Virus record (IMG/VR): IMGVR_UViG_3300047445_000186
Location: 124,001 to 188,000 of that record
Reading direction: 5' to 3' (one strand)
Length of the DNA: 64,000 bases
Under the pieces are notes generated by a model. It was given only the letters and a program-made list of their open reading frames with translations. It made no database searches and was not told the DNA's origin. The translations under genes and the position numbers were made by a program. Below are positions 34,222-57,862 of the stretch, piece after piece; the first letter of the stretch is position 1; each line of letters starts with the position of its first letter.

Positions 34222-35250
34222 ATGGAACCGAAACTTCTGACACGCGATGCCTTCCGAGAAGGTGTGTTCGCACGGGACAAGCACAAGTGCGTGTTCTGCA
34301 GCGAGCCTGCTCAGGACGCGCATCACATTCTCGAGCGCCGTCTTTGGCCTGATGGCGGGTACTACCTCGAGAACGGCGCGTCTGTTTGCGGTGAGCACCA
34401 CATTCTGTGCGAGCAGACTGTCATTTCGGTCGAGCAAGTTCGCGATGCATGTGGCATTCGCCAACCGCACGTTCCTCCGCATTTCTACCCAGATCACCAG
34501 TACGACAAGTGGGGCAACCCTCTGCTCGATGGTGGCAAGCGCGGTCGTGGTGAACTGTTCTTCGACGAGTCAGTCCAGAAGGTCCTTGGCCAAGGTGGCG
34601 TGCTCGATCTGTTCACGTTGTACGCGAAGTACGGACGGACGTTCCATCTGCCATGGTCTCCTGGCATTCACGACGATGACAAGGCGCTGAAGGACTGCAC
34701 ACAGTTCGAAGGTAAGCGCGTGATCATGTCGCTGAAAGCCGATGGTGAGAACACCACTGGGTACTCGGACGGGCACATTCATGCTCGCTCGATTGACAGC
34801 CGAGGCGGTGAAGATCGCGCTTGGGTGAAGCAATTCCTGTCTGAGAACGTGTGCTACAACTTGCCTGAAGGCTGGCGAATCTGCGGTGAAAATCTGTGGG
34901 CCGAGCACTCGATCAAGTACAGCGACTTGAAATCGTACTTCTACGGCTTCAGCCTGTGGAATGAACGGAACGTCTGCCTCTCGTGGGACGAGACGATCGA
35001 GTATTTCGCTCTGTTAAACGTCACTCCAGTCGACGTGCTCTATGACGGTATCTGGGACGAGGCTGCGATCAGGAAAATCGAGAAGACGCTTGATCTTGAG
35101 AAGGTTGAAGGGTACGTGATCCGACTCGCTGAAGCGTACCCGTACAGCCAATTCAAGAGCTCGATCGCGAAGTTCGTCCGACCCGGGCACGTACAGACAT
35201 CTAAGCATTGGCGGGCAGGTAGCCGCTTCACACCGAACAAACTAGCATGA
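34222..35250 (+). CDS. HNH-like domain fused to ATP-dependent RNA ligase
   Basis: N-term CVFC..DAHH..C..HH; C-term KADGEN (motif I), ICGEN, EGYVIR, AKFVR. Confidence 0.85.
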   Translation: MEPKLLTRDAFREGVFARDKHKCVFCSEPAQDAHHILERRLWPDGGYYLENGASVCGEHHILCEQTVISVEQVRDACGIRQPHVPPHFYPDHQYDKWGNPLLDGGKRGRGELFFDESVQKVLGQGGVLDLFTLYAKYGRTFHLPWSPGIHDDDKALKDCTQFEGKRVIMSLKADGENTTGYSDGHIHARSIDSRGGEDRAWVKQFLSENVCYNLPEGWRICGENLWAEHSIKYSDLKSYFYGFSLWNERNVCLSWDETIEYFALLNVTPVDVLYDGIWDEAAIRKIEKTLDLEKVEGYVIRLAEAYPYSQFKSSIAKFVRPGHVQTSKHWRAGSRFTPNKLA

Positions 35251-35846
35251 GTGATCAACTTCCGTTCCTGTTCTCTGACACGTACACGCTCGAAGGGTAC
35301 GTTCCACCGTTCGGGTACTCAGACACGCTCCTGAATCTGGAGTCACGTCGAGTCCAAACCGGTGGCCGAGGCCGAATTCACTTCGGTGTCGGGTACGATG
35401 ATGACGAAGGCGAGCCAACGTACGAGCTGCGGTACTCGGTCACGGTTCTTGGTGTTCCAATGCCAGGTGATCACGACTCGGCGTACGGCGTGAATCGGAT
35501 CAGTCAACATGATGACAAGTTCACGATTGCCGCTAAGTGCGTGAACGCGTTCTTGGATAACAAATGGATGTGCGATAAGCATCCAGAAGCTGCGAAGTTC
35601 TTGAAGGAGAATGCGAAAGCGCTGAATCAGTCGAAGCGGTACTGGTCGGCACAAGAGCACCTGAAAGAGATAGCGAAAGAGAAGATCAAGCTCGCGCAGA
35701 TGCAGCGAAAGATTCAGCGTGCAGAGCTTGTTGCTCAGCTGAAGGCGTTCGAGGTTCTAGAGGGTCGGCAACTGAGCGACGAAGAGCGTCAGCAGAAGTG
35801 GGCCGAGATCAGTGGTGGCTTGCCGTACGGGGAGTATCAACCGTGA
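35247..35846 (+). CDS. Hypothetical protein
   Basis: ATGA coupling. Confidence 0.6.
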   Translation: MSDQLPFLFSDTYTLEGYVPPFGYSDTLLNLESRRVQTGGRGRIHFGVGYDDDEGEPTYELRYSVTVLGVPMPGDHDSAYGVNRISQHDDKFTIAAKCVNAFLDNKWMCDKHPEAAKFLKENAKALNQSKRYWSAQEHLKEIAKEKIKLAQMQRKIQRAELVAQLKAFEVLEGRQLSDEERQQKWAEISGGLPYGEYQP

Positions 35847-35918
35847 ATGAAGACGTTCGATACTACCTTGGCTTGGTGGTCCTGCTCACCCTTCTAGGCG
35901 TGCTCGTTCTGATCAGAT

Positions 35919-35951
35919 AAAAAGAAGGGTCTCCATTTCGGGAGACCCTTT
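35919..35951. terminator. Bidirectional terminator
   Basis: AAAAAG-AAGGGTCTCC-loop-GGAGACCCTT-T. Confidence 0.75.
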
Positions 35952-35987
35952 CAAAGCCCCGAACCAGCAGCGGGGCGGAGACATCCT

Positions 35988-36080
35988 AAAAAGGGGGCTC
36001 TCACTTCACACGAAATGAGAGCCCCAGAGTGAGCCAGCTGAGGAGGAGAAGAGGCTGCCTTGGAACAGCTGCTGGCTCAC
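35988..36080 (-). ncRNA. Putative ~93-nt antisense-strand sRNA with exposed CUUCUCCUCCU
   Basis: TGGATA-N17-TAGAAT promoter on - strand, 10-bp closing stem, terminator hairpin + U5. Confidence 0.6.
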
Positions 36081-36233
36081 GGTTTATTCTATCCAGACTT
36101 CCTGGGATTATCCACGTCCAGGTGAAACAGTCTGTAAGCGCTTCGCGCTTGAACCCGCTCTCAGGATCTCGTGCAATTGCATTGAAACATACAATGATGT
36201 TCTCGCATCAATTTTGTAATTTTGGAGTTTCAA

Positions 36234-36482
36234 ATGTACCTGCACACCGCCGAACCGAAGACCGCCGATCAACTGCTCGCTCGCCTCCGTGAGATCGAGC
36301 GTGGTGCCATTCGTCGCGCTACTCCCGACGGTCTGGAACAACTCCGCGTCGATGCATTCCGCGTTGATGGTCCTGTGTCGGTCGAGACGATGGCCGAAGT
36401 GAAGCGCCGTCTCGATGAAGACTTCGCGAACGCCGGCGATTACAACCAGGGTCAGTACATCGTTCACAAGTGGGCGAGCTGA
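36234..36482 (+). CDS. Hypothetical protein
   Basis: SD GGAG; TACAAT upstream. Confidence 0.6.
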   Translation: MYLHTAEPKTADQLLARLREIERGAIRRATPDGLEQLRVDAFRVDGPVSVETMAEVKRRLDEDFANAGDYNQGQYIVHKWAS

Positions 36483-37383: not shown

Positions 37384-37420
37384 TCTGTATTTCATTTCAT
37401 AGAAGACCTACAATACACGC

Positions 37421-38257
37421 ATGACTATCAAATCAAAACACATTGCAGTCGGTGCAGCCGTTCTCGCAGTCATTACCTTCGTCGCCTTCGTTTGTACGTG
37501 GCTGATGTTCATGCACACCGAGACGGTCGATCCTGGCTACCATGGCGTGATCATCGACAAGCCATACTTCGGCGGCCATCAAGGTGTTCGAGACGAACCA
37601 CTGAAAGAGGGCCGGATTCTGCTCTTCCGCACCTCCTCGGTCGAGGACGTTCGAATGACGCCACAGTCGCACGTCGTGAAGGTCGATGACTACTCGTCGA
37701 AGGACAACATTCTGCTTGACTTTGAAACCACGATCCAGTTCCGAATCACGGATGCTGTGAAGCTGGTTGACAAGTTCGGTGCAGGTTGGTTCGACAACAA
37801 CATCAAGAATCAGTACCTGGCGATCGTGCGAGAAGCCGTGAAACGGAAGACGATGACGGAGATGATGTCTGATGTGAATGCTGCGCAGCAGATCGATGAC
37901 GAAGTCACGAAGGGTCTGCAAGCACTGGTCACGAACTCCAATCTGCCGATCGAGATCTTGAATGTGTCTATGGGCCGTGCAAAGCCGAACGAGAACGTGC
38001 TCGCTCAGATGAACGAAACCGCTGCGCAACAGCAACGGAAGAAGACACTGATCGAAGCTGAAGCGGCTGAAGTGCAACGTAAAGCCGAGCAGACAGCGAA
38101 GGCTGCAGCTGATAACGCGTACCGCAATGCGATGGGTCTCTCGCCAGAGATGTTCATCCAGCTTGAGAGCATCAAGCGGTACTCCGATGCTTGTGCAAAG
38201 TCTGCGCACTGTATCGTGACCTCCGGCCAGACGAACATTCAAGTACCGGTGAAGTAA
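37421..38257 (+). CDS. SPFH/band-7 (prohibitin-like) membrane protein
   Basis: N-terminal TM, VDPGYHGV, SKDN, coiled-coil C-terminus. Confidence 0.85.
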   Translation: MTIKSKHIAVGAAVLAVITFVAFVCTWLMFMHTETVDPGYHGVIIDKPYFGGHQGVRDEPLKEGRILLFRTSSVEDVRMTPQSHVVKVDDYSSKDNILLDFETTIQFRITDAVKLVDKFGAGWFDNNIKNQYLAIVREAVKRKTMTEMMSDVNAAQQIDDEVTKGLQALVTNSNLPIEILNVSMGRAKPNENVLAQMNETAAQQQRKKTLIEAEAAEVQRKAEQTAKAAADNAYRNAMGLSPEMFIQLESIKRYSDACAKSAHCIVTSGQTNIQVPVK

Positions 38258-43996: not shown

Positions 43997-44072
43997 GGGA
44001 CTTTCGTATAGCTGGTGCGTACGGGAGCTTGAAAACCTTCAGGAAGCGGTTCGATTCCGCTAGGTCCCACCA
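43997..44072 (+). tRNA. tRNA-Phe(GAA)
   Basis: Loop TTGAAAA, CCA. Confidence 0.85.
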
Positions 44073-44076
44073 ATTT

Positions 44077-44151
44077 GCTTCGTTCGACTACCGGTTAGGT
44101 CGCTAGCCTTTCAAGCTGGAGAAACGGGTTCGACTCCCGTACGAAGCACCA
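44077..44151 (+). tRNA. tRNA-Glu(TTC)
   Basis: Loop CTTTCAA, CCA. Confidence 0.9.
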
Positions 44152-44158
44152 GAACAAT

Positions 44159-44237
44159 AGGGTTGAAATCGAAGTGGCACGAGATACATGGCTTTGACCC
44201 ATGGTAATATCAGGTTCGAGTCCTGACAGCCCTGCCA
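44159..44237 (+). tRNA. tRNA-Gln(TTG)
   Basis: CATGG-CTTTGAC-CCATG, CCA. Confidence 0.88.
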
Positions 44238-44242
44238 AACAT

Positions 44243-44320
44243 ATCAGCGTCGTCTAAATGGTCTAGGACATCAGACTTTCAATCTGAGCAATGCGGGTTC
44301 AACTCCCGTCGCTGATGCCA
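44243..44320 (+). tRNA. tRNA-Glu(TTC)
   Basis: TCAGA-CTTTCAA-TCTGA, CCA. Confidence 0.9.
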
Positions 44321-44326
44321 AACAAT

Positions 44327-44401
44327 ACCTTAGTAGCTCAGTGGTAGAGCACCGTCTTGATAAGGCGTAGGTCGTTGGTTCGATTCCAACTTAAGGTACC
44401 A
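44327..44401 (+). tRNA. tRNA-Ile(GAT)
   Basis: Loop TTGATAA, CCA. Confidence 0.88.
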
Positions 44402-44408
44402 GAATAAT

Positions 44409-44482
44409 GGGACGTTCGTATATGGGTATTATGTGGCGCTGTCTACGCTACGAAACGGGTTCGAGTCCCGTACGTCCCGCCA
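44409..44482 (+). tRNA. tRNA-Asp(GTC)
   Basis: TGGCG-CTGTCTA-CGCTA, CCA. Confidence 0.88.
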
Positions 44483-44486
44483 AATT

Positions 44487-44561
44487 CGTGCGGTAGCATT
44501 ATGGTAATGCGCCACCCTCATAAGGTGTCCCAAGTGGGTTCGATTCCCACCTGCACGACCA
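44487..44561 (+). tRNA. tRNA-Met(CAT), elongator-type or Ile2
   Basis: Loop CTCATAA; C1-G72 paired so not initiator-like; CCA. Confidence 0.8.
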
Positions 44562-44573
44562 AGTGTCCTTTGC

Positions 44574-44645
44574 TCCGGTGTAGCTCAGCGGTAGAGCAGC
44601 TCGCTGTTAACGAGTTGGTCGTTGGTTCGATCCCAGCCTCCGGAG
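44574..44645 (+). tRNA. tRNA-Asn(GTT), no encoded CCA
   Basis: Loop CTGTTAA; ends G-CAA. Confidence 0.85.
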
Positions 44646-44661
44646 CAAAGAACATTTCTAT

Positions 44662-44756
44662 TCCCCTGTACTCTAATTGGTAAGAGACCTGGCTGTTAAC
44701 CAGACGTAAAGGCCGTAAGGCGTAATATGCAAGTTCGAAGCTTGCTGGGGGAGCCA
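44662..44756 (+). tRNA. tRNA-Asn(GTT) with long variable arm
   Basis: Loop CTGTTAA; ~25-nt variable region with GCC-GTAA-GGC hairpin; CCA. Confidence 0.78.
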
Positions 44757-44806
44757 AGATTAAGAAACCTTACTCACGCGGTCACTCGCGGTCCCGTAGG
44801 GTTTAT

Positions 44807-44882
44807 GCGCGGTTAGCTCAGTTGGTAGAGCAAACGACCGATAATCGTTAGGTCGCTGGTTCGAATCCAGCACTGCGCACCA
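44807..44882 (+). tRNA. tRNA-Ile(GAT), C at position 33
   Basis: AACGA-CCGATAA-TCGTT, CCA. Confidence 0.88.
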
Positions 44883-44890
44883 CAAATTAT

Positions 44891-44967
44891 GCCTCTTTAG
44901 CTCAACTGGATAGAGCACTGGCCTACGAAGCCGGGGGTTGCAGGTTCGAATCCTGTGAGAGGCACCA
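44891..44967 (+). tRNA. tRNA-Arg(ACG)
   Basis: Loop CTACGAA, CCA. Confidence 0.92.
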
Positions 44968-44973
44968 GAATAT

Positions 44974-45034
44974 TCCGACCGTCAGTGCAAGGTTATCCTT
45001 CTACGATTCCCCCTTGCGCGATCTCTTTGTCGGA
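44974..45034 (+). ncRNA. Y-RNA-like ncRNA inside tRNA array
   Basis: TCCGAC/GTCGGA stem, CCG-N9-GGTTATC, GTGCAAGG/CCTTGCGC stem, 3' ATCTCTTTGT shared with 54929-54985. Confidence 0.7.
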
Positions 45035-45042
45035 CGAAACAT

Positions 45043-45116
45043 AGGTCCTTGGTGTAATGGCAGCATGACGGTCTCCAAAACCGTTCGTGGGGGTTCGAGT
45101 CCCTCAGGACCTGCCA
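45043..45116 (+). tRNA. tRNA-Trp(CCA)
   Basis: ACGGT-CTCCAAA-ACCGT, CCA. Confidence 0.92.
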
Positions 45117-45185
45117 AGATAACGGTGCGTTTAGGAACGGACGCTTAATTGCCAACCCCACATAATCTGGCGGCCGAATAACAAT

Positions 45186-45260
45186 GTGCACTTGACAGAA
45201 TGGTAATGTCGCTGGCTGCAACCCAGTTGTTCGGGGGTTCGATTCCCTCAGTGCACTCCA
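45186..45260 (+). tRNA. tRNA-Cys(GCA)
   Basis: Loop CTGCAAC, U73, CCA. Confidence 0.88.
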
Positions 45261-45416
45261 ATTACGACAGGAGCAAGGCGCCCTCGGGCTTGTGGCTAGC
45301 TGTGGAAAGTGACCCTCCACCTCCAACGTCGTTCCAATCAAAGCTTCGTCGTTCCATTCACACGGGTACGCGACTCCGTTTCTCGCAAGAGGTGCAGGGC
45401 GAAGCAACGCAATTAT

Positions 45417-45489
45417 AGGTGAGCCAGCGGCGCTGGACAAGAGCATCCAAAGCTCGAAGTTGGTAGTTCGACTCTGCCATCGCCTGCCA
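45417..45489 (+). tRNA. Atypical tRNA-Trp(CCA), minimal D arm
   Basis: D arm CCAGC-GGC-GCTGG; loop ATCCAAA; TTCGACT; CCA. Confidence 0.7.
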
Positions 45490-45494
45490 ATTAT

Positions 45495-45566
45495 AGGTGA
45501 TCCATGGGCCGTGGACATGAGCCTCCAAAACTCGTTGGGACAGTTCGACTCTGTCATTGCCTGCCA
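45495..45566 (+). tRNA. Atypical tRNA-Trp(CCA), minimal D arm
   Basis: D arm CCATG-GGC-CGTGG; loop CTCCAAA; CCA. Confidence 0.7.
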
Positions 45567-45574
45567 AAATTTAT

Positions 45575-45650
45575 GGTGTACGTAGTGTAGTGGTCTGCAC
45601 CCTAGGCTGTGAACCTGGTAGTGGGAGTTCGATCCTCCTCGTACACCCCA
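45575..45650 (+). tRNA. tRNA-His(GTG)
   Basis: G-1/C73, loop CTGTGAA, CCA. Confidence 0.9.
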
Positions 45651-45658
45651 GAATATGT

Positions 45659-45731
45659 TGCCTCGTGATATGGAAATCGCCCCTGGCTCTGACCCAGGTG
45701 GATGACGGTTCGATTCCGTCCGGGGTTGCCA
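45659..45731 (+). tRNA. tRNA-Gln(CTG), short D arm
   Basis: CCTGG-CTCTGAC-CCAGG, CCA. Confidence 0.8.
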
Positions 45732-45736
45732 AATAC

Positions 45737-45812
45737 GCCTTGTGAGTGAATGTGGAGAGCACAGCGGTTTCGTATTCCGCAGGACGCAGTTCGACTCTGC
45801 GACAAGGCACCA
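45737..45812 (+). tRNA. tRNA-Thr(CGT)
   Basis: GCGGT-TTCGTAT-TCCGC; GCC acceptor start, A73, CCA. Confidence 0.78.
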
Positions 45813-45819
45813 GAATTAT

Positions 45820-45892
45820 TGGGGTATGACATGGACGTTGGCCTGGGCTTTGACCCCGGTGCCGGTCGGTTCGATTCCGACTACCCTTGCCA
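45820..45892 (+). tRNA. tRNA-Gln(TTG), short D arm
   Basis: CTGGG-CTTTGAC-CCCGG, CCA. Confidence 0.78.
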
Positions 45893-45895
45893 AAC

Positions 45896-45973
45896 ACCGC
45901 ATTAGCTCAACTGGATCAGAGCGTCGCACTCCGAAGGCGACAGATGTGGGTTCGAATCCCATGTGTGGTACCA
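45896..45973 (+). tRNA. tRNA-Arg(CCG)
   Basis: Loop CTCCGAA, CCA. Confidence 0.85.
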
Positions 45974-45980
45974 AAATTAC

Positions 45981-46056
45981 GCCGTCATAGCTCAGTTGGT
46001 AGAGCAGTTCCTTGGTATGGAGAAGGTCAGGGGTTCGATTCCTCTTGACGGCACCA
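45981..46056 (+). tRNA. tRNA-Thr(GGT)
   Basis: Loop TTGGTAT, CCA. Confidence 0.9.
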
Positions 46057-46248
46057 GTTTAGCACATGCTCGGCATGATAACACAGGGTCATTGATCCGG
46101 ACATGTTCGATCTGCGGTCTGACGTAGGAGTACGGCAAAGACAAGCTCGGAACGGGAACTCCCATGTGCTGATTCATTACTTGAAAGGAGCGCGTAATGC
46201 GTACGTCAGTTTCGACGCCTAGCGCGTCTGGTAAACGCCATACACTTT

Positions 46249-46324
46249 GGGTGTATGGCGTAAAGGTTAGCGCATCGGGCTTTTAACCCGTAAGGTCAGA
46301 GTTCGACTCTCTGTGCACCCACCA
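46249..46324 (+). tRNA. tRNA-Lys(TTT)
   Basis: CGGG-CTTTTAA-CCCG, CCA. Confidence 0.9.
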
Positions 46325-48180: not shown

Positions 48181-48444
48181 AATTTCGCGCGATTTTTCTC
48201 ACAAAAATTTCCCACGACGAAAAAAACCGCATGGCGGGAATTCGTTGGGGAATTCACGACGGCAAGAAGTTCCTTCGGTTCGACTTCTGGACCACGAGCT
48301 TTCGAATTACGGGGATGCGATGAAGACAGTGAAAGACATTTTGTTCGTGGCGGCCATGATCCTCTGCATCAGCGGAGTTCTTTACCTGCGGCAGATCTGG
48401 TAGGATGAACTCTCTGTAAATAGTGCATCATTTACGGAGCCGTC

Positions 48445-49610: not shown

Positions 49611-49687
49611 GCCTCTGTAGCACAACTGGATAGTGCAGCCCTCTTCTAAAGGGTCCGTTGTAGGTTCAAATCCTATCAGAGGTACCA
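49611..49687 (+). tRNA. tRNA-Arg(TCT), orphan
   Basis: GCCCT-CTTCTAA-AGGGT, CCA. Confidence 0.9.
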
Positions 49688-57793: not shown

Positions 57794-57862
57794 AGTTCGT
57801 TACAGAAAACACGAGCTCCTAACCCGAGCTCGTGTTATAGTTTCCGGTAACTGGAGAATTTT

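What the first reader, a model, noticed from the sequence alone, without database searches (positions are those of the whole stretch)
35919..36114. Antisense-strand sRNA presenting an anti-Shine-Dalgarno sequence
Seen: in an intergenic gap on the - strand, TGGATA-N17-TAGAAT (36114-36086) is followed by GUGAGCCAGC...GCUGGCUCAC (10-bp stem). The stem encloses a small hairpin and the unpaired CUCUUCUCCUCCUCA, then a GGGGCUCUCA/UGAGAGCCCC terminator with U5. A second hairpin and terminator follow. Established: sRNAs with exposed CUCC motifs (AbcR, cuckoo RNAs) pair with ribosome-binding sites. Inference: an early phage sRNA that silences mRNAs with strong SD sites, from the host or the phage itself (e.g. 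AGGAGG before 25188). Leaderless mRNAs would escape it.
Basis: partly seen in the sequence, partly recalled or inferred. Interest (0 to 1): 0.66.

Follow-up and report, generated by a model that had tools for sequence, protein, structure and literature searches.

The report
Candidate antisense small RNA in jumbo phage
An uncultured 332-kb jumbo phage has, in a gap between forward-strand genes, a clean reverse-strand promoter–structure–double-terminator unit that probably makes a ~93-nt RNA with an exposed 15-nt pyrimidine tract. That this RNA exists and silences ribosome-binding sites is untested and has no comparative support.

Summary
On the - strand, a TAGAAT -10 hexamer (36091-36086) sits 5 nt before a perfect 10-bp stem (36080-36071 / 36038-36029). 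The stem encloses a small hairpin and a 15-nt pyrimidine segment (36053-36039) predicted unpaired with P>0.97. Two intrinsic terminators with U5 follow. The fold is far better than shuffles (z -5.6 and -6.6). U-tracts and three G·U pairs assign it to the - strand. T1 has the most stable hairpin among the intergenic terminator candidates listed for the 332-kb genome, yet it lies on the 'wrong' strand of a + strand gene block. The nearest - strand gene in my map that could feed it is about 9 kb upstream, inside the tRNA array. Only 28 phage-type -10 hexamers lie on the - strand genome-wide.

An independent small - strand transcript is therefore likely (~0.7). The anti-Shine-Dalgarno function is only plausible. 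No RNA run was listed. All six contigs are 100% identical. No homologue or analogue turned up in related loci, seven searched relative genomes, or Rfam. The loop pairs with the phage's own ribosome-binding sites no better than composition-matched shuffles. It is not a cuckoo/AbcR family member.

A relevant side finding: at least 29 phage genes look leaderless.

The parts
36086..36114 (-). Promoter-like site: TGGATA (36114-36109), 17-nt spacer, TAGAAT (36091-36086). The predicted +1 is at 36080/36079.
   Evidence: One search gives 9 of 12 matches, which is not above shuffles. TAGAAT is the phage's own -10 type, about 9-fold enriched in intergenic DNA. Only 28 such hexamers lie on the - strand genome-wide. 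The hexamer-to-+1 spacing matches the 6-nt spacing seen at 21 leaderless genes. The upstream element ACCTGG lies at 32 nt rather than the class-typical 36±2.
36029..36080 (-). 5' domain: a 10-bp closing stem (36080-36071 / 36038-36029), a bulged A at 36070, and an inner hairpin at 36069-36054 that contains two U·G pairs.
   Evidence: The two U·G pairs become C·A mismatches on the + strand. The + strand fold is weaker, -47.1 against -50.1 kcal/mol.
36039..36053 (-). Unpaired CU-rich segment CUCUUCUCCUCCUCA, the putative seed. It contains CUCC twice and CCUCC once.
   Evidence: Unpaired probability is 0.84-1.0 per base. It is the only homopurine/homopyrimidine tract of 15 nt or more in non-coding DNA of the genome.
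35988..36025 (-). Terminator T1: a 14-pair hairpin (36025-35994), then C and U5 (35992-35988). It would give an RNA of about 93 nt. It terminates in the - direction only.
   Evidence: At -25.6 kcal/mol it is the most stable hairpin among the intergenic terminator candidates listed. It has one U·G pair, which is C·A on the + strand.
35956..35976 (-). Short GC hairpin (GCCCCG / CGGGGC) lying between the two terminators.
35919..35950 (-). Terminator T2: a 10-pair hairpin (35950-35925), then C and U5. A read-through RNA would be about 162 nt. It is weakly bidirectional, since the + strand tail is TTTC. It abuts the stop codon (35918-35920) of a possible 25-aa membrane ORF on the + strand.
36150..36233 (+). 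Divergent + strand promoter and 5' UTR of gene p82: a GAACCCG-type upstream element, then TACAAT at 36190-36195, then a GGAG Shine-Dalgarno before ATG 36234.
   Evidence: (site at genome position 160190). This resembles the class defined. It marks the right-hand limit of the - strand unit.

Best explanation
The gap holds a small, independently transcribed gene on the - strand, convergent with the upstream RNA-ligase operon and back-to-back with the promoter of gene p82.

Proposed mechanism, step by step:
- Transcription starts at about 36080. That is 6-7 nt after the TAGAAT hexamer and right at the first base of a 10-bp stem that would protect the 5' end.
- It ends mostly at T1, giving an RNA of about 93 nt. 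Read-through ends at T2, giving about 162 nt.
- The RNA displays a 15-nt pyrimidine segment held open between the closing stem and an inner hairpin.
- The most likely mode of action is base pairing through 6-9 nt of this segment with purine-rich sequences. In practice these would be Shine-Dalgarno regions of selected host mRNAs, or possibly phage mRNAs, blocking 30S binding.

Shown: the sequence anatomy, the strand polarity, the rarity of the parts in this genome, and the absence of a competing - strand gene.

Inferred: that it is transcribed at all (my estimate about 0.7), that the segment is a seed, and that its targets are ribosome-binding sites. The confidence given is for the whole statement.
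For: - Structure is far better than shuffles and is confined to 35915-36081. The flank 36082-36233 is not structured, z -1.4.
- U5 tails follow both hairpins on the - strand only, and three G·U pairs favour that strand.
- T1 is the most stable hairpin among the listed intergenic terminator candidates, and it is orphaned on the minority strand. My gene map has 401 + and 48 - genes. The nearest - strand gene in that map that could feed the terminators is about 9 kb upstream and lies within the tRNA array.
- The next - strand -10-type hexamer is also about 9 kb upstream.
- TAGAAT is the phage's own -10 type and is rare on the - strand, P about 0.005 for its position.
- The predicted +1 coincides with the base of the stem, using the hexamer-to-start spacing seen at 21-29 leaderless genes.
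- The CU segment is unpaired with P>0.97 over most of its length. It is the only tract of 15 nt or more in non-coding DNA.
- Source gene callers leave the gap empty, and p82 is a real + strand gene.
- Intergenic sRNAs delimited by a start site and a nearby terminator are documented in another jumbo phage (PMC11512511).
- Anti-SD CU-rich loops are documented for CcsR/cuckoo RNAs (PMC8034643).
Against: - There is no expression evidence; no RNA run was listed.
- There is no sequence variation. All six contigs carrying the locus are 100% identical, so covariation cannot be tested.
- No homologue was found in any of these:
  - 65 loci around RNA-ligase homologues;
  - loci of p82 homologues;
  - six whole relative genomes searched with the model.
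- No analogous CU-tract-plus-terminator unit appears in two relatives scanned in full.
- The -35 is weak, and the upstream element is mis-spaced for the phage's main promoter class.
- The loop pairs with phage start regions no better than shuffled loops of the same composition, and the best duplex sites are not at gene starts.
- The U-tail has 5 U. Hfq-dependent sRNAs of E. coli have 7 or more (PMC5558911 abstract).
- A seed enclosed by a 10-bp stem is topologically limited to short helices.
Confidence: 0.4

Rival explanations
1. The - strand RNA exists but acts in cis. It is perfectly complementary to + strand transcripts that read out of the RNA-ligase / p199 operon, which has no good + strand terminator. 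The sRNA and convergent transcription would then trim, destabilise or insulate that read-through from the p82 operon, by duplex cleavage or by polymerase collision. The CU tract would have no seed role.
For: - No + strand terminator lies between 35846 and 36233. T1 works in the - direction only, and T2 has just TTTC on the + side.
- The by far best duplex partner of the loop in the whole genome is its own + strand complement, -31.3 kcal/mol against -25.2 for the next.
- p82 has its own promoter downstream of the unit.
- No trans targets stand out in the phage.
Against: - A simple + strand terminator would do the same job and is what this phage uses elsewhere, with many + strand terminators in +/+ gaps.
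- The idea does not explain the carefully exposed pyrimidine segment.
- It is equally untested for lack of RNA data.
Confidence: 0.22
2. There is no dedicated RNA gene. The hairpins are only an insulator or terminator cluster that stops stray antisense transcription and partly stops the upstream operon. The TAGAAT hexamer and the CU tract are coincidences.
For: - The sigma-70 scan is at chance level.
- The promoter does not fit the phage's promoter class.
- The element is absent from all relatives examined and from p82-homologue loci, so it is dispensable for the lineage.
- Tracts of 15 nt or more are not rare genome-wide.
Against: - The 5' domain (36080-36029) is not a terminator and is not needed for insulation.
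- No - strand promoter-type hexamer exists for 9 kb upstream, so there is little to terminate.
- The coincidence of hexamer, +1 at the stem base and open tract directly before the strongest listed terminator has a low joint probability.
Confidence: 0.2
3. The - strand transcript is a leaderless mRNA for a 24-residue peptide, from GUG at 36080 to UGA inside the T1 loop.
For: The phage uses leaderless starts widely, with 29 genes having the -10 hexamer 5-7 nt before the start codon. The reading frame from the predicted +1 is open for 24 codons (read directly).
Against: - All 29 leaderless candidates at 5-7 nt spacing start with ATG. The single GTG case lies at 9 nt.
- The start codon here is GUG and is buried in a 10-bp GC-rich stem.
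- The stop codon lies inside the terminator hairpin.
- No homologue exists to test coding constraint.
- The gene callers did not call it.
Confidence: 0.05
4. The functional strand or molecule is different. One option is that the + strand RNA displays GAGGAGGAGAAGAGG as a Shine-Dalgarno-like or GGA-rich decoy, or as the ribosome-binding site of a 21-codon UUG ORF. Another is that the DNA itself acts, for example a polypurine tract flanked by palindromes serving as a replication or R-loop element.
For: - The + strand also folds well, z -5.8.
- The + strand is certainly the dominant transcribed strand in this region.
- The purine tract is unpaired on that strand too.
Against: - The U-tracts, G·U pairs and the -10 hexamer all point to the - strand.
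- The + strand version has no promoter or terminator of its own.
- There is no GC-skew turn at this position.
- The element is single-copy.
Confidence: 0.08

Closest known systems
CcsR / 'cuckoo' RNAs of Alphaproteobacteria (Rfam ar14 group), as described in PMC8034643
   Same: Small RNAs that display a CU-rich anti-Shine-Dalgarno motif in unpaired regions and end in an intrinsic terminator. They lie beside a gene for a small protein. Here, the 82-aa protein p82 lies divergently next to the unit.
   Different: - Cuckoo RNAs have two hairpin loops, each carrying CCUCCUCCC. This element has one 15-nt segment reading CUCUUCUCCUCCUCA, and it sits in a multiloop rather than a hairpin loop.
- There is no Rfam match even at E up to 10.
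- The neighbour p82 has no DUF1127 or any other Pfam domain.
- The element is phage-encoded, single-copy and not conserved.
Intergenic sRNAs mapped in jumbo phages, for example the 11 sRNAs of Pseudomonas phage 201phi2-1 (PMC11512511)
   Same: A short transcription unit in a giant phage genome, defined by a start site followed closely by a terminator, with function unknown.
   Different: Those were found experimentally, and one is conserved across genera. This one is only predicted, lies antisense to its neighbours, belongs to an unrelated phage lineage (nearest cultured relative Ralstonia phage RsoM2USA), and has no homologue in that phage.
C/U-rich-seed sRNAs that occlude ribosome-binding sites (AbcR1/2, RoxS/RsaE); recalled from general knowledge, not tested beyond Rfam
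   Same: Exposed CUCC-type motif, and a stem-loop followed by a terminator.
   Different: No covariance-model match to any Rfam family. No predicted targets with extended complementarity in the phage. The host is unknown.
Convergent or bidirectional intrinsic terminators between operons
   Same: GC-rich hairpins at the end of an operon. T2 abuts the stop codon of the last + strand ORF.
   Different: Both U-tracts lie on the strand opposite to the genes. T1 has no + strand tail at all. A non-terminator domain and a -10 hexamer precede them.

Membership tests
Cuckoo / CcsR RNA | Two hairpin loops, each carrying CCUCCUCCC (PMC8034643) | tested here: not met
   There is a single CU segment. The exact nonamer is absent; the segment reads CUCUUCUCCUCCUCA. 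It lies in a multiloop, not a hairpin loop.
Cuckoo / CcsR RNA | Match to the Rfam covariance models of the group | tested here: not met
   No family reached gathering score. No relevant family appeared at E up to 10 on 35800-36300.
Cuckoo / CcsR RNA (CIN1 subgroup) | Adjacent ORF with a DUF1127 domain | tested here: not met
   p82 and its homologues have no Pfam hit of relevance.
Trans-acting base-pairing sRNA (generic) | Own promoter and own intrinsic terminator giving a discrete 50-300-nt RNA | tested here: inconclusive
   The terminators are strong. The -10 hexamer is well placed but the -35 is weak. No RNA data exist.
Trans-acting base-pairing sRNA (generic) | Accessible seed that is conserved among homologues | tested here: inconclusive
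   The accessibility criterion is met. Conservation cannot be tested because there are no homologues or variants.
Trans-acting base-pairing sRNA (generic) | Targets whose complementarity exceeds background | tested here: not met
   Within the phage genome, pairing to start regions equals that of composition-matched shuffled loops, and the top duplexes are not at starts. Host targets cannot be tested because the host is unknown.
Hfq-dependent sRNA (E. coli type) | Terminator hairpin followed by 7 or more U (PMC5558911) | tested here: not met
   U5 follows both T1 and T2. The rule may not hold in the unknown host.
Intrinsic (Rho-independent) terminator | GC-rich hairpin directly followed by a U-run on the transcribed strand | tested here: met
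   T1 has 14 pairs, 8 of them GC, then CUUUUU. T2 has 10 pairs, 6 of them GC, then CUUUUU. Both are on the - strand.
This phage's main promoter class ([AT]CC[CT][GA]N element 36±2 nt before TA[CGT]AAT) | Upstream element at 35-38 nt from the -10 hexamer | tested here: not met
   The element ACCTGG lies at 32 nt. All 37 class members are on the + strand.
Leaderless mRNA | ATG 5-7 nt after the -10 hexamer, with an unstructured 5' end | tested here: not met
   The codon at +1 is GUG and is the first element of a 10-bp stem.

The most novel reading that the evidence does not exclude
A jumbo phage whose operon-leading genes are largely leaderless, and whose internal genes have weak Shine-Dalgarno sites, encodes an anti-Shine-Dalgarno sRNA. 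The sRNA would dampen SD-dependent translation of the host, or of late phage genes, while sparing the phage's own leaderless messages. This would be a translational host-takeover device based on an RNA.
Probability: 0.1. Interest if true: 0.8.

Novelty: new member of a known kind. Interest (0 to 1): 0.42.

Why it matters
Functions of phage-encoded small RNAs are almost unknown, especially in jumbo phages, where such RNAs have only recently been mapped. A phage sRNA that presents an anti-ribosome-binding-site sequence, in a phage that itself starts many messages without a leader, would suggest a simple RNA-based way to tilt translation towards the phage. Such an RNA would also be a compact part for synthetic regulation. 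As it stands, this is a well-formed prediction in an uncultured phage, with no expression or comparative support.

Tried and rejected
**Family and homologue searches**
- Rfam at gathering score and at E up to 10 gave nothing relevant.
- DNA and protein searches of the cultured-phage collection with the locus and its flanks gave no match, except for the RNA ligase.
- Synteny downstream of the ligase is not kept in RsoM2USA or SCTP-2. It is also not kept in 63 metagenomic loci or in L017, the only locus with a p199 homologue.
- A covariance model of the 96-nt unit found nothing in any of these:
  - 65 loci around ligase homologues;
  - the RsoM2USA genome;
  - loci of p82 homologues and chance 17-mer hits;
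  - five whole related IMG/VR records;
  - eleven bacterial and archaeal contigs that share a 19-mer.
- There is no paralogue in the phage's own genome.

**Variation and expression**
- The other contigs carrying the locus are all 100% identical, so no covariation test was possible.
- No RNA runs were listed.

**Analogue scan**
- I scanned the phage's own genome and two complete relatives for a CU tract ahead of a terminator. The hits were ordinary gene terminators or coding sequence.
- The other 'orphan' - strand terminators in the window (48210-48251, 57810-57834) turned out to be a weak hairpin and a palindrome inside a + strand promoter.

**Alternative reading frames**
- The rival that the terminators belong to the - strand 119-aa ORF (36467-36108) is rejected. 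Gene callers and homologues support the + strand gene p82 instead.
- The codon-usage test alone was ambiguous.

Full report
**Context**

The window is bases 124001-188000 of a 331,776-bp IMG/VR virus record estimated 94% complete. It is a jumbo phage of about 54% G+C. It carries an array of 18 tRNA genes and one further tRNA gene nearby.

Its RNA ligase is 62% identical to that of Ralstonia phage RsoM2USA. It is 54-60% identical to those of Salicola phage SCTP-2 and the Caulobacter CcrSC group.

My own gene map gives 401 genes on the + strand and 48 on the - strand. Around the finding, all genes are on the + strand:
- RNA ligase, 34222-35250;
- a 199-aa ORFan, 35247-35846;
- an 82-aa protein, p82, 36234-36482;
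- further small ORFs;
- an SPFH/Band-7 protein, 37421-38257.

**The observation**

Reading the - strand:
- TGGATA (36114-36109), a 17-nt spacer, then TAGAAT (36091-36086);
- five bases, then a perfect 10-bp stem (36080-36071 with 36038-36029);
- inside the stem, a bulged A and a 6-pair hairpin (36069-36054);
- then the unpaired CUCUUCUCCUCCUCA (36053-36039);
- three bases after the stem, a 14-pair terminator hairpin T1 (36025-35994) with C+U5;
- a short GC hairpin (35976-35956);
- a second terminator T2 (35950-35925) with C+U5.

The 96-nt unit folds at -50.1 kcal/mol with z = -5.6. The 167-nt unit folds at -80.7 kcal/mol with z = -6.6. No shuffle did as well. The CU segment is unpaired in the ensemble, with P>0.97 for nearly all bases. 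The sequence upstream (36082-36233) is not significantly structured, z = -1.4.

**Which strand**

Inverted repeats fold on both strands, and the + strand version also scores well (z -5.8). Three things assign the element to the - strand:
- Both hairpins are followed by U5 on the - strand only. On the + strand, T1 is followed by AGAG and T2 by UUUC.
- Three U·G pairs, two in the inner hairpin and one in T1, become C·A mismatches on the + strand. This lowers its stability to -47.1 kcal/mol and dissolves the inner hairpin in the centroid structure.
- The -10 hexamer is on the - strand.

**Is the gap really non-coding?**

A - strand ORF of 119 codons (36467-36108) ends inside the putative -35. If it were a real gene, the terminators would be ordinary. 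Codon statistics alone could not decide. Other evidence does:
- The + strand gene p82 is the one present in the public protein collection. The source gene calls on all contigs leave 35847-36233 empty.
- p82 has homologues at 51% and 61% identity, with an invariant N-terminus MYLHT. It has a GGAG ribosome-binding site and a promoter of the phage's own type just upstream.

The - strand ORF is therefore a shadow frame, and the right border of the gap is firm. On the left, a possible 25-codon membrane ORF (GTG 35843 to TAA 35920, preceded by GGGGAG) may extend the + strand operon to 35920. It was not called by the sources.

**How unusual is the arrangement in this genome?**

I scanned the whole genome for intrinsic terminators.
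- In gaps between + strand genes, terminators are nearly all on the + strand.
- Only about five lie on the - strand. Two of them are T1 and T2.
- The two others that lie in the window proved trivial on inspection.
- T1, at -25.6 kcal/mol, is the most stable hairpin among the intergenic candidates listed (those at -12 kcal/mol or better).

In my gene map, the nearest - strand gene that could feed these terminators is about 9 kb upstream. It lies within the tRNA array, so it is probably a false call. The next - strand -10-type hexamer is also about 9 kb upstream.

**The promoter**

The generic sigma-70 scan is at chance level: 2 sites found against 2.8 expected. So I looked at the phage's own signals.

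Intergenic DNA is strongly enriched for TACAAT and TAGAAT (8-9-fold), for GTTACA (15-fold) and for CTAAATA. These resolve into classes:
- GTTACA, then about 21 nt, then GTACAAT-TCACCCAT;
- an element [AT]CC[CT][GA]N placed 36±2 nt before TA[CGT]AAT, with 37 sites, all on the + strand;
- cGTTACAATTG.

The candidate's -10, TAGAAT, is the phage's own type. Such hexamers are very asymmetric, with 130 on the + strand and 28 on the - strand. The chance of one lying within 60 nt of the structure is about 0.005.

Its upstream element (ACCTGG) is at 32 nt, outside the class range, and the -35 match is weak. The promoter is therefore plausible but not a recognisable member of a phage class. 'Early' cannot be inferred.

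One further point favours it. In this phage, 21 genes have exactly 6 nt between the hexamer and the ATG, and 29 have 5-7 nt. This puts +1 at the sixth or seventh base after the hexamer. Applied here, that places +1 at 36080/36079, the very first base of the 10-bp stem. That is the layout expected for a stable small RNA.

**Function**

The segment contains CUCC twice and CCUCC once, so it can pair with any Shine-Dalgarno sequence. That is true of almost any CU-rich 15-mer.
- I paired the 16-nt loop with the -25..+10 region of all 449 predicted genes. The median was -6.8 kcal/mol. Intragenic control windows gave -5.6, and shuffled loops of the same composition gave -6.4. The tails were indistinguishable.
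- In a whole-genome duplex scan, only 1 of the 60 best sites lies at a gene start. The best site by far is the element's own complement on the + strand.
- The phage's ribosome-binding sites are modest: GGAG in 115 and GGAGG in 13 of 449 genes.

So there is no sign of a dedicated phage target. Host targets cannot be examined because the host is unknown.

**Comparative evidence**

None is available.
- The locus is 100% identical in the other contigs that carry it, from three JGI samples and two SRA runs.
- A covariance model of the unit found nothing in any of these:
  - 65 loci around ligase homologues;
  - RsoM2USA;
  - loci of p82 homologues, where p82 is preceded directly by another gene or by a divergent gene;
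  - five whole related jumbo-phage records, three of them at least 97% complete;
  - bacterial contigs sharing a 19-mer.
- No analogous unit exists in two relatives scanned in full.
- Rfam has no match.
- No RNA run could be listed.

Absence from relatives shows only that the element is lineage-specific.

**Verdict on mechanism**

I consider an independent - strand transcript likely, at about 0.7. The complete statement, a trans-acting sRNA that pairs through the CU segment with purine-rich ribosome-binding regions, I put at 0.4.

The main rivals are:
- a cis-antisense or collision role against read-through from the upstream operon, which has no + strand terminator of its own (0.22);
- a mere insulator with coincidental promoter and tract (0.2);
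- a leaderless 24-codon ORF (0.05). It is disfavoured because the start is GUG and is buried in the stem;
- a + strand or DNA-level role (0.08).

**Comparison with known systems**

The element works most like CU-rich anti-SD sRNAs such as CcsR/cuckoo (PMC8034643). It fails each membership criterion tested: motif and loop architecture, Rfam model, and DUF1127 neighbour.

It resembles the intergenic sRNAs mapped in jumbo phage 201phi2-1 (PMC11512511) in kind but not in sequence.

Its U5 tail is shorter than the 7 or more U of E. coli Hfq-dependent sRNAs (PMC5558911).

I rate it a new, unverified member of a known kind. The most interesting reading still open links it to the phage's heavy use of leaderless messages. 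If the sRNA dampens SD-dependent initiation, leaderless phage messages would be spared. I give this about 0.1.

Noticed in passing
Genome-wide. In the window, for example the hexamer at 37409-37414 before ATG 37421 (SPFH gene). Other hexamers lie at window 217, 5479, 7523, 17501, 42744, 46399 and 58764.: At least 29 genes have a TA[CGT]AAT hexamer 5-7 nt before their ATG, with a sharp peak of 21 at exactly 6 nt. Many operon-leading genes of this phage are therefore probably leaderless mRNAs. This may hint at a host that translates leaderless messages well.
   Followed up: partly
Genome-wide. In the window, for example 36150-36195 (+), 13368, 15350 and 47299.: The phage has its own promoter grammar. 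One class has an [AT]CC[CT][GA]N element 36±2 nt before the -10 hexamer, with 37 sites, all on the + strand. A second class is GTTACA, about 21 nt, then GTACAAT-TCACCCAT. Further motifs are cGTTACAATTG and CTAAATA. The temporal classes are unknown.
   Followed up: partly
window 43997-46321 and 49611-49684 (+): An array of 18 tRNA genes, plus one further tRNA gene 3 kb downstream.
   Followed up: no
window 34222-35250 (+): The RNA ligase (Pfam RNA_ligase, residues 166-319) carries an N-terminal segment, residues about 9-65, with weak HNH-endonuclease profile hits. The same two-part architecture is conserved in RsoM2USA, SCTP-2 and the Caulobacter jumbo phages.
   Followed up: no
window 35843-35920 (+): An uncalled 25-codon ORF with a GGGGAG ribosome-binding site, encoding a single hydrophobic helix. 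It overlaps the stop codon of the 199-aa gene and ends at the foot of terminator T2.
   Followed up: no
window 36136-36150: A perfect palindrome, AAGCGC-GAA-GCGCTT, lies between the divergent - strand and + strand promoters. It could be an operator for a regulator of one or both.
   Followed up: no
window 36234-36482 (+); homologues P0003 and P0004: p82 belongs to a small family of phage proteins of about 80 aa with an invariant N-terminus MYLHTxEPKTAE and no Pfam or PHROG match. In other phages it is not preceded by any sRNA-like unit.
   Followed up: partly
L072 starts at window 36015; L073 starts at window 35986: Two independent assemblies of the same phage break exactly inside or at the foot of terminator T1. 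This suggests that the strong hairpin disturbs sequencing or assembly there.
   Followed up: no
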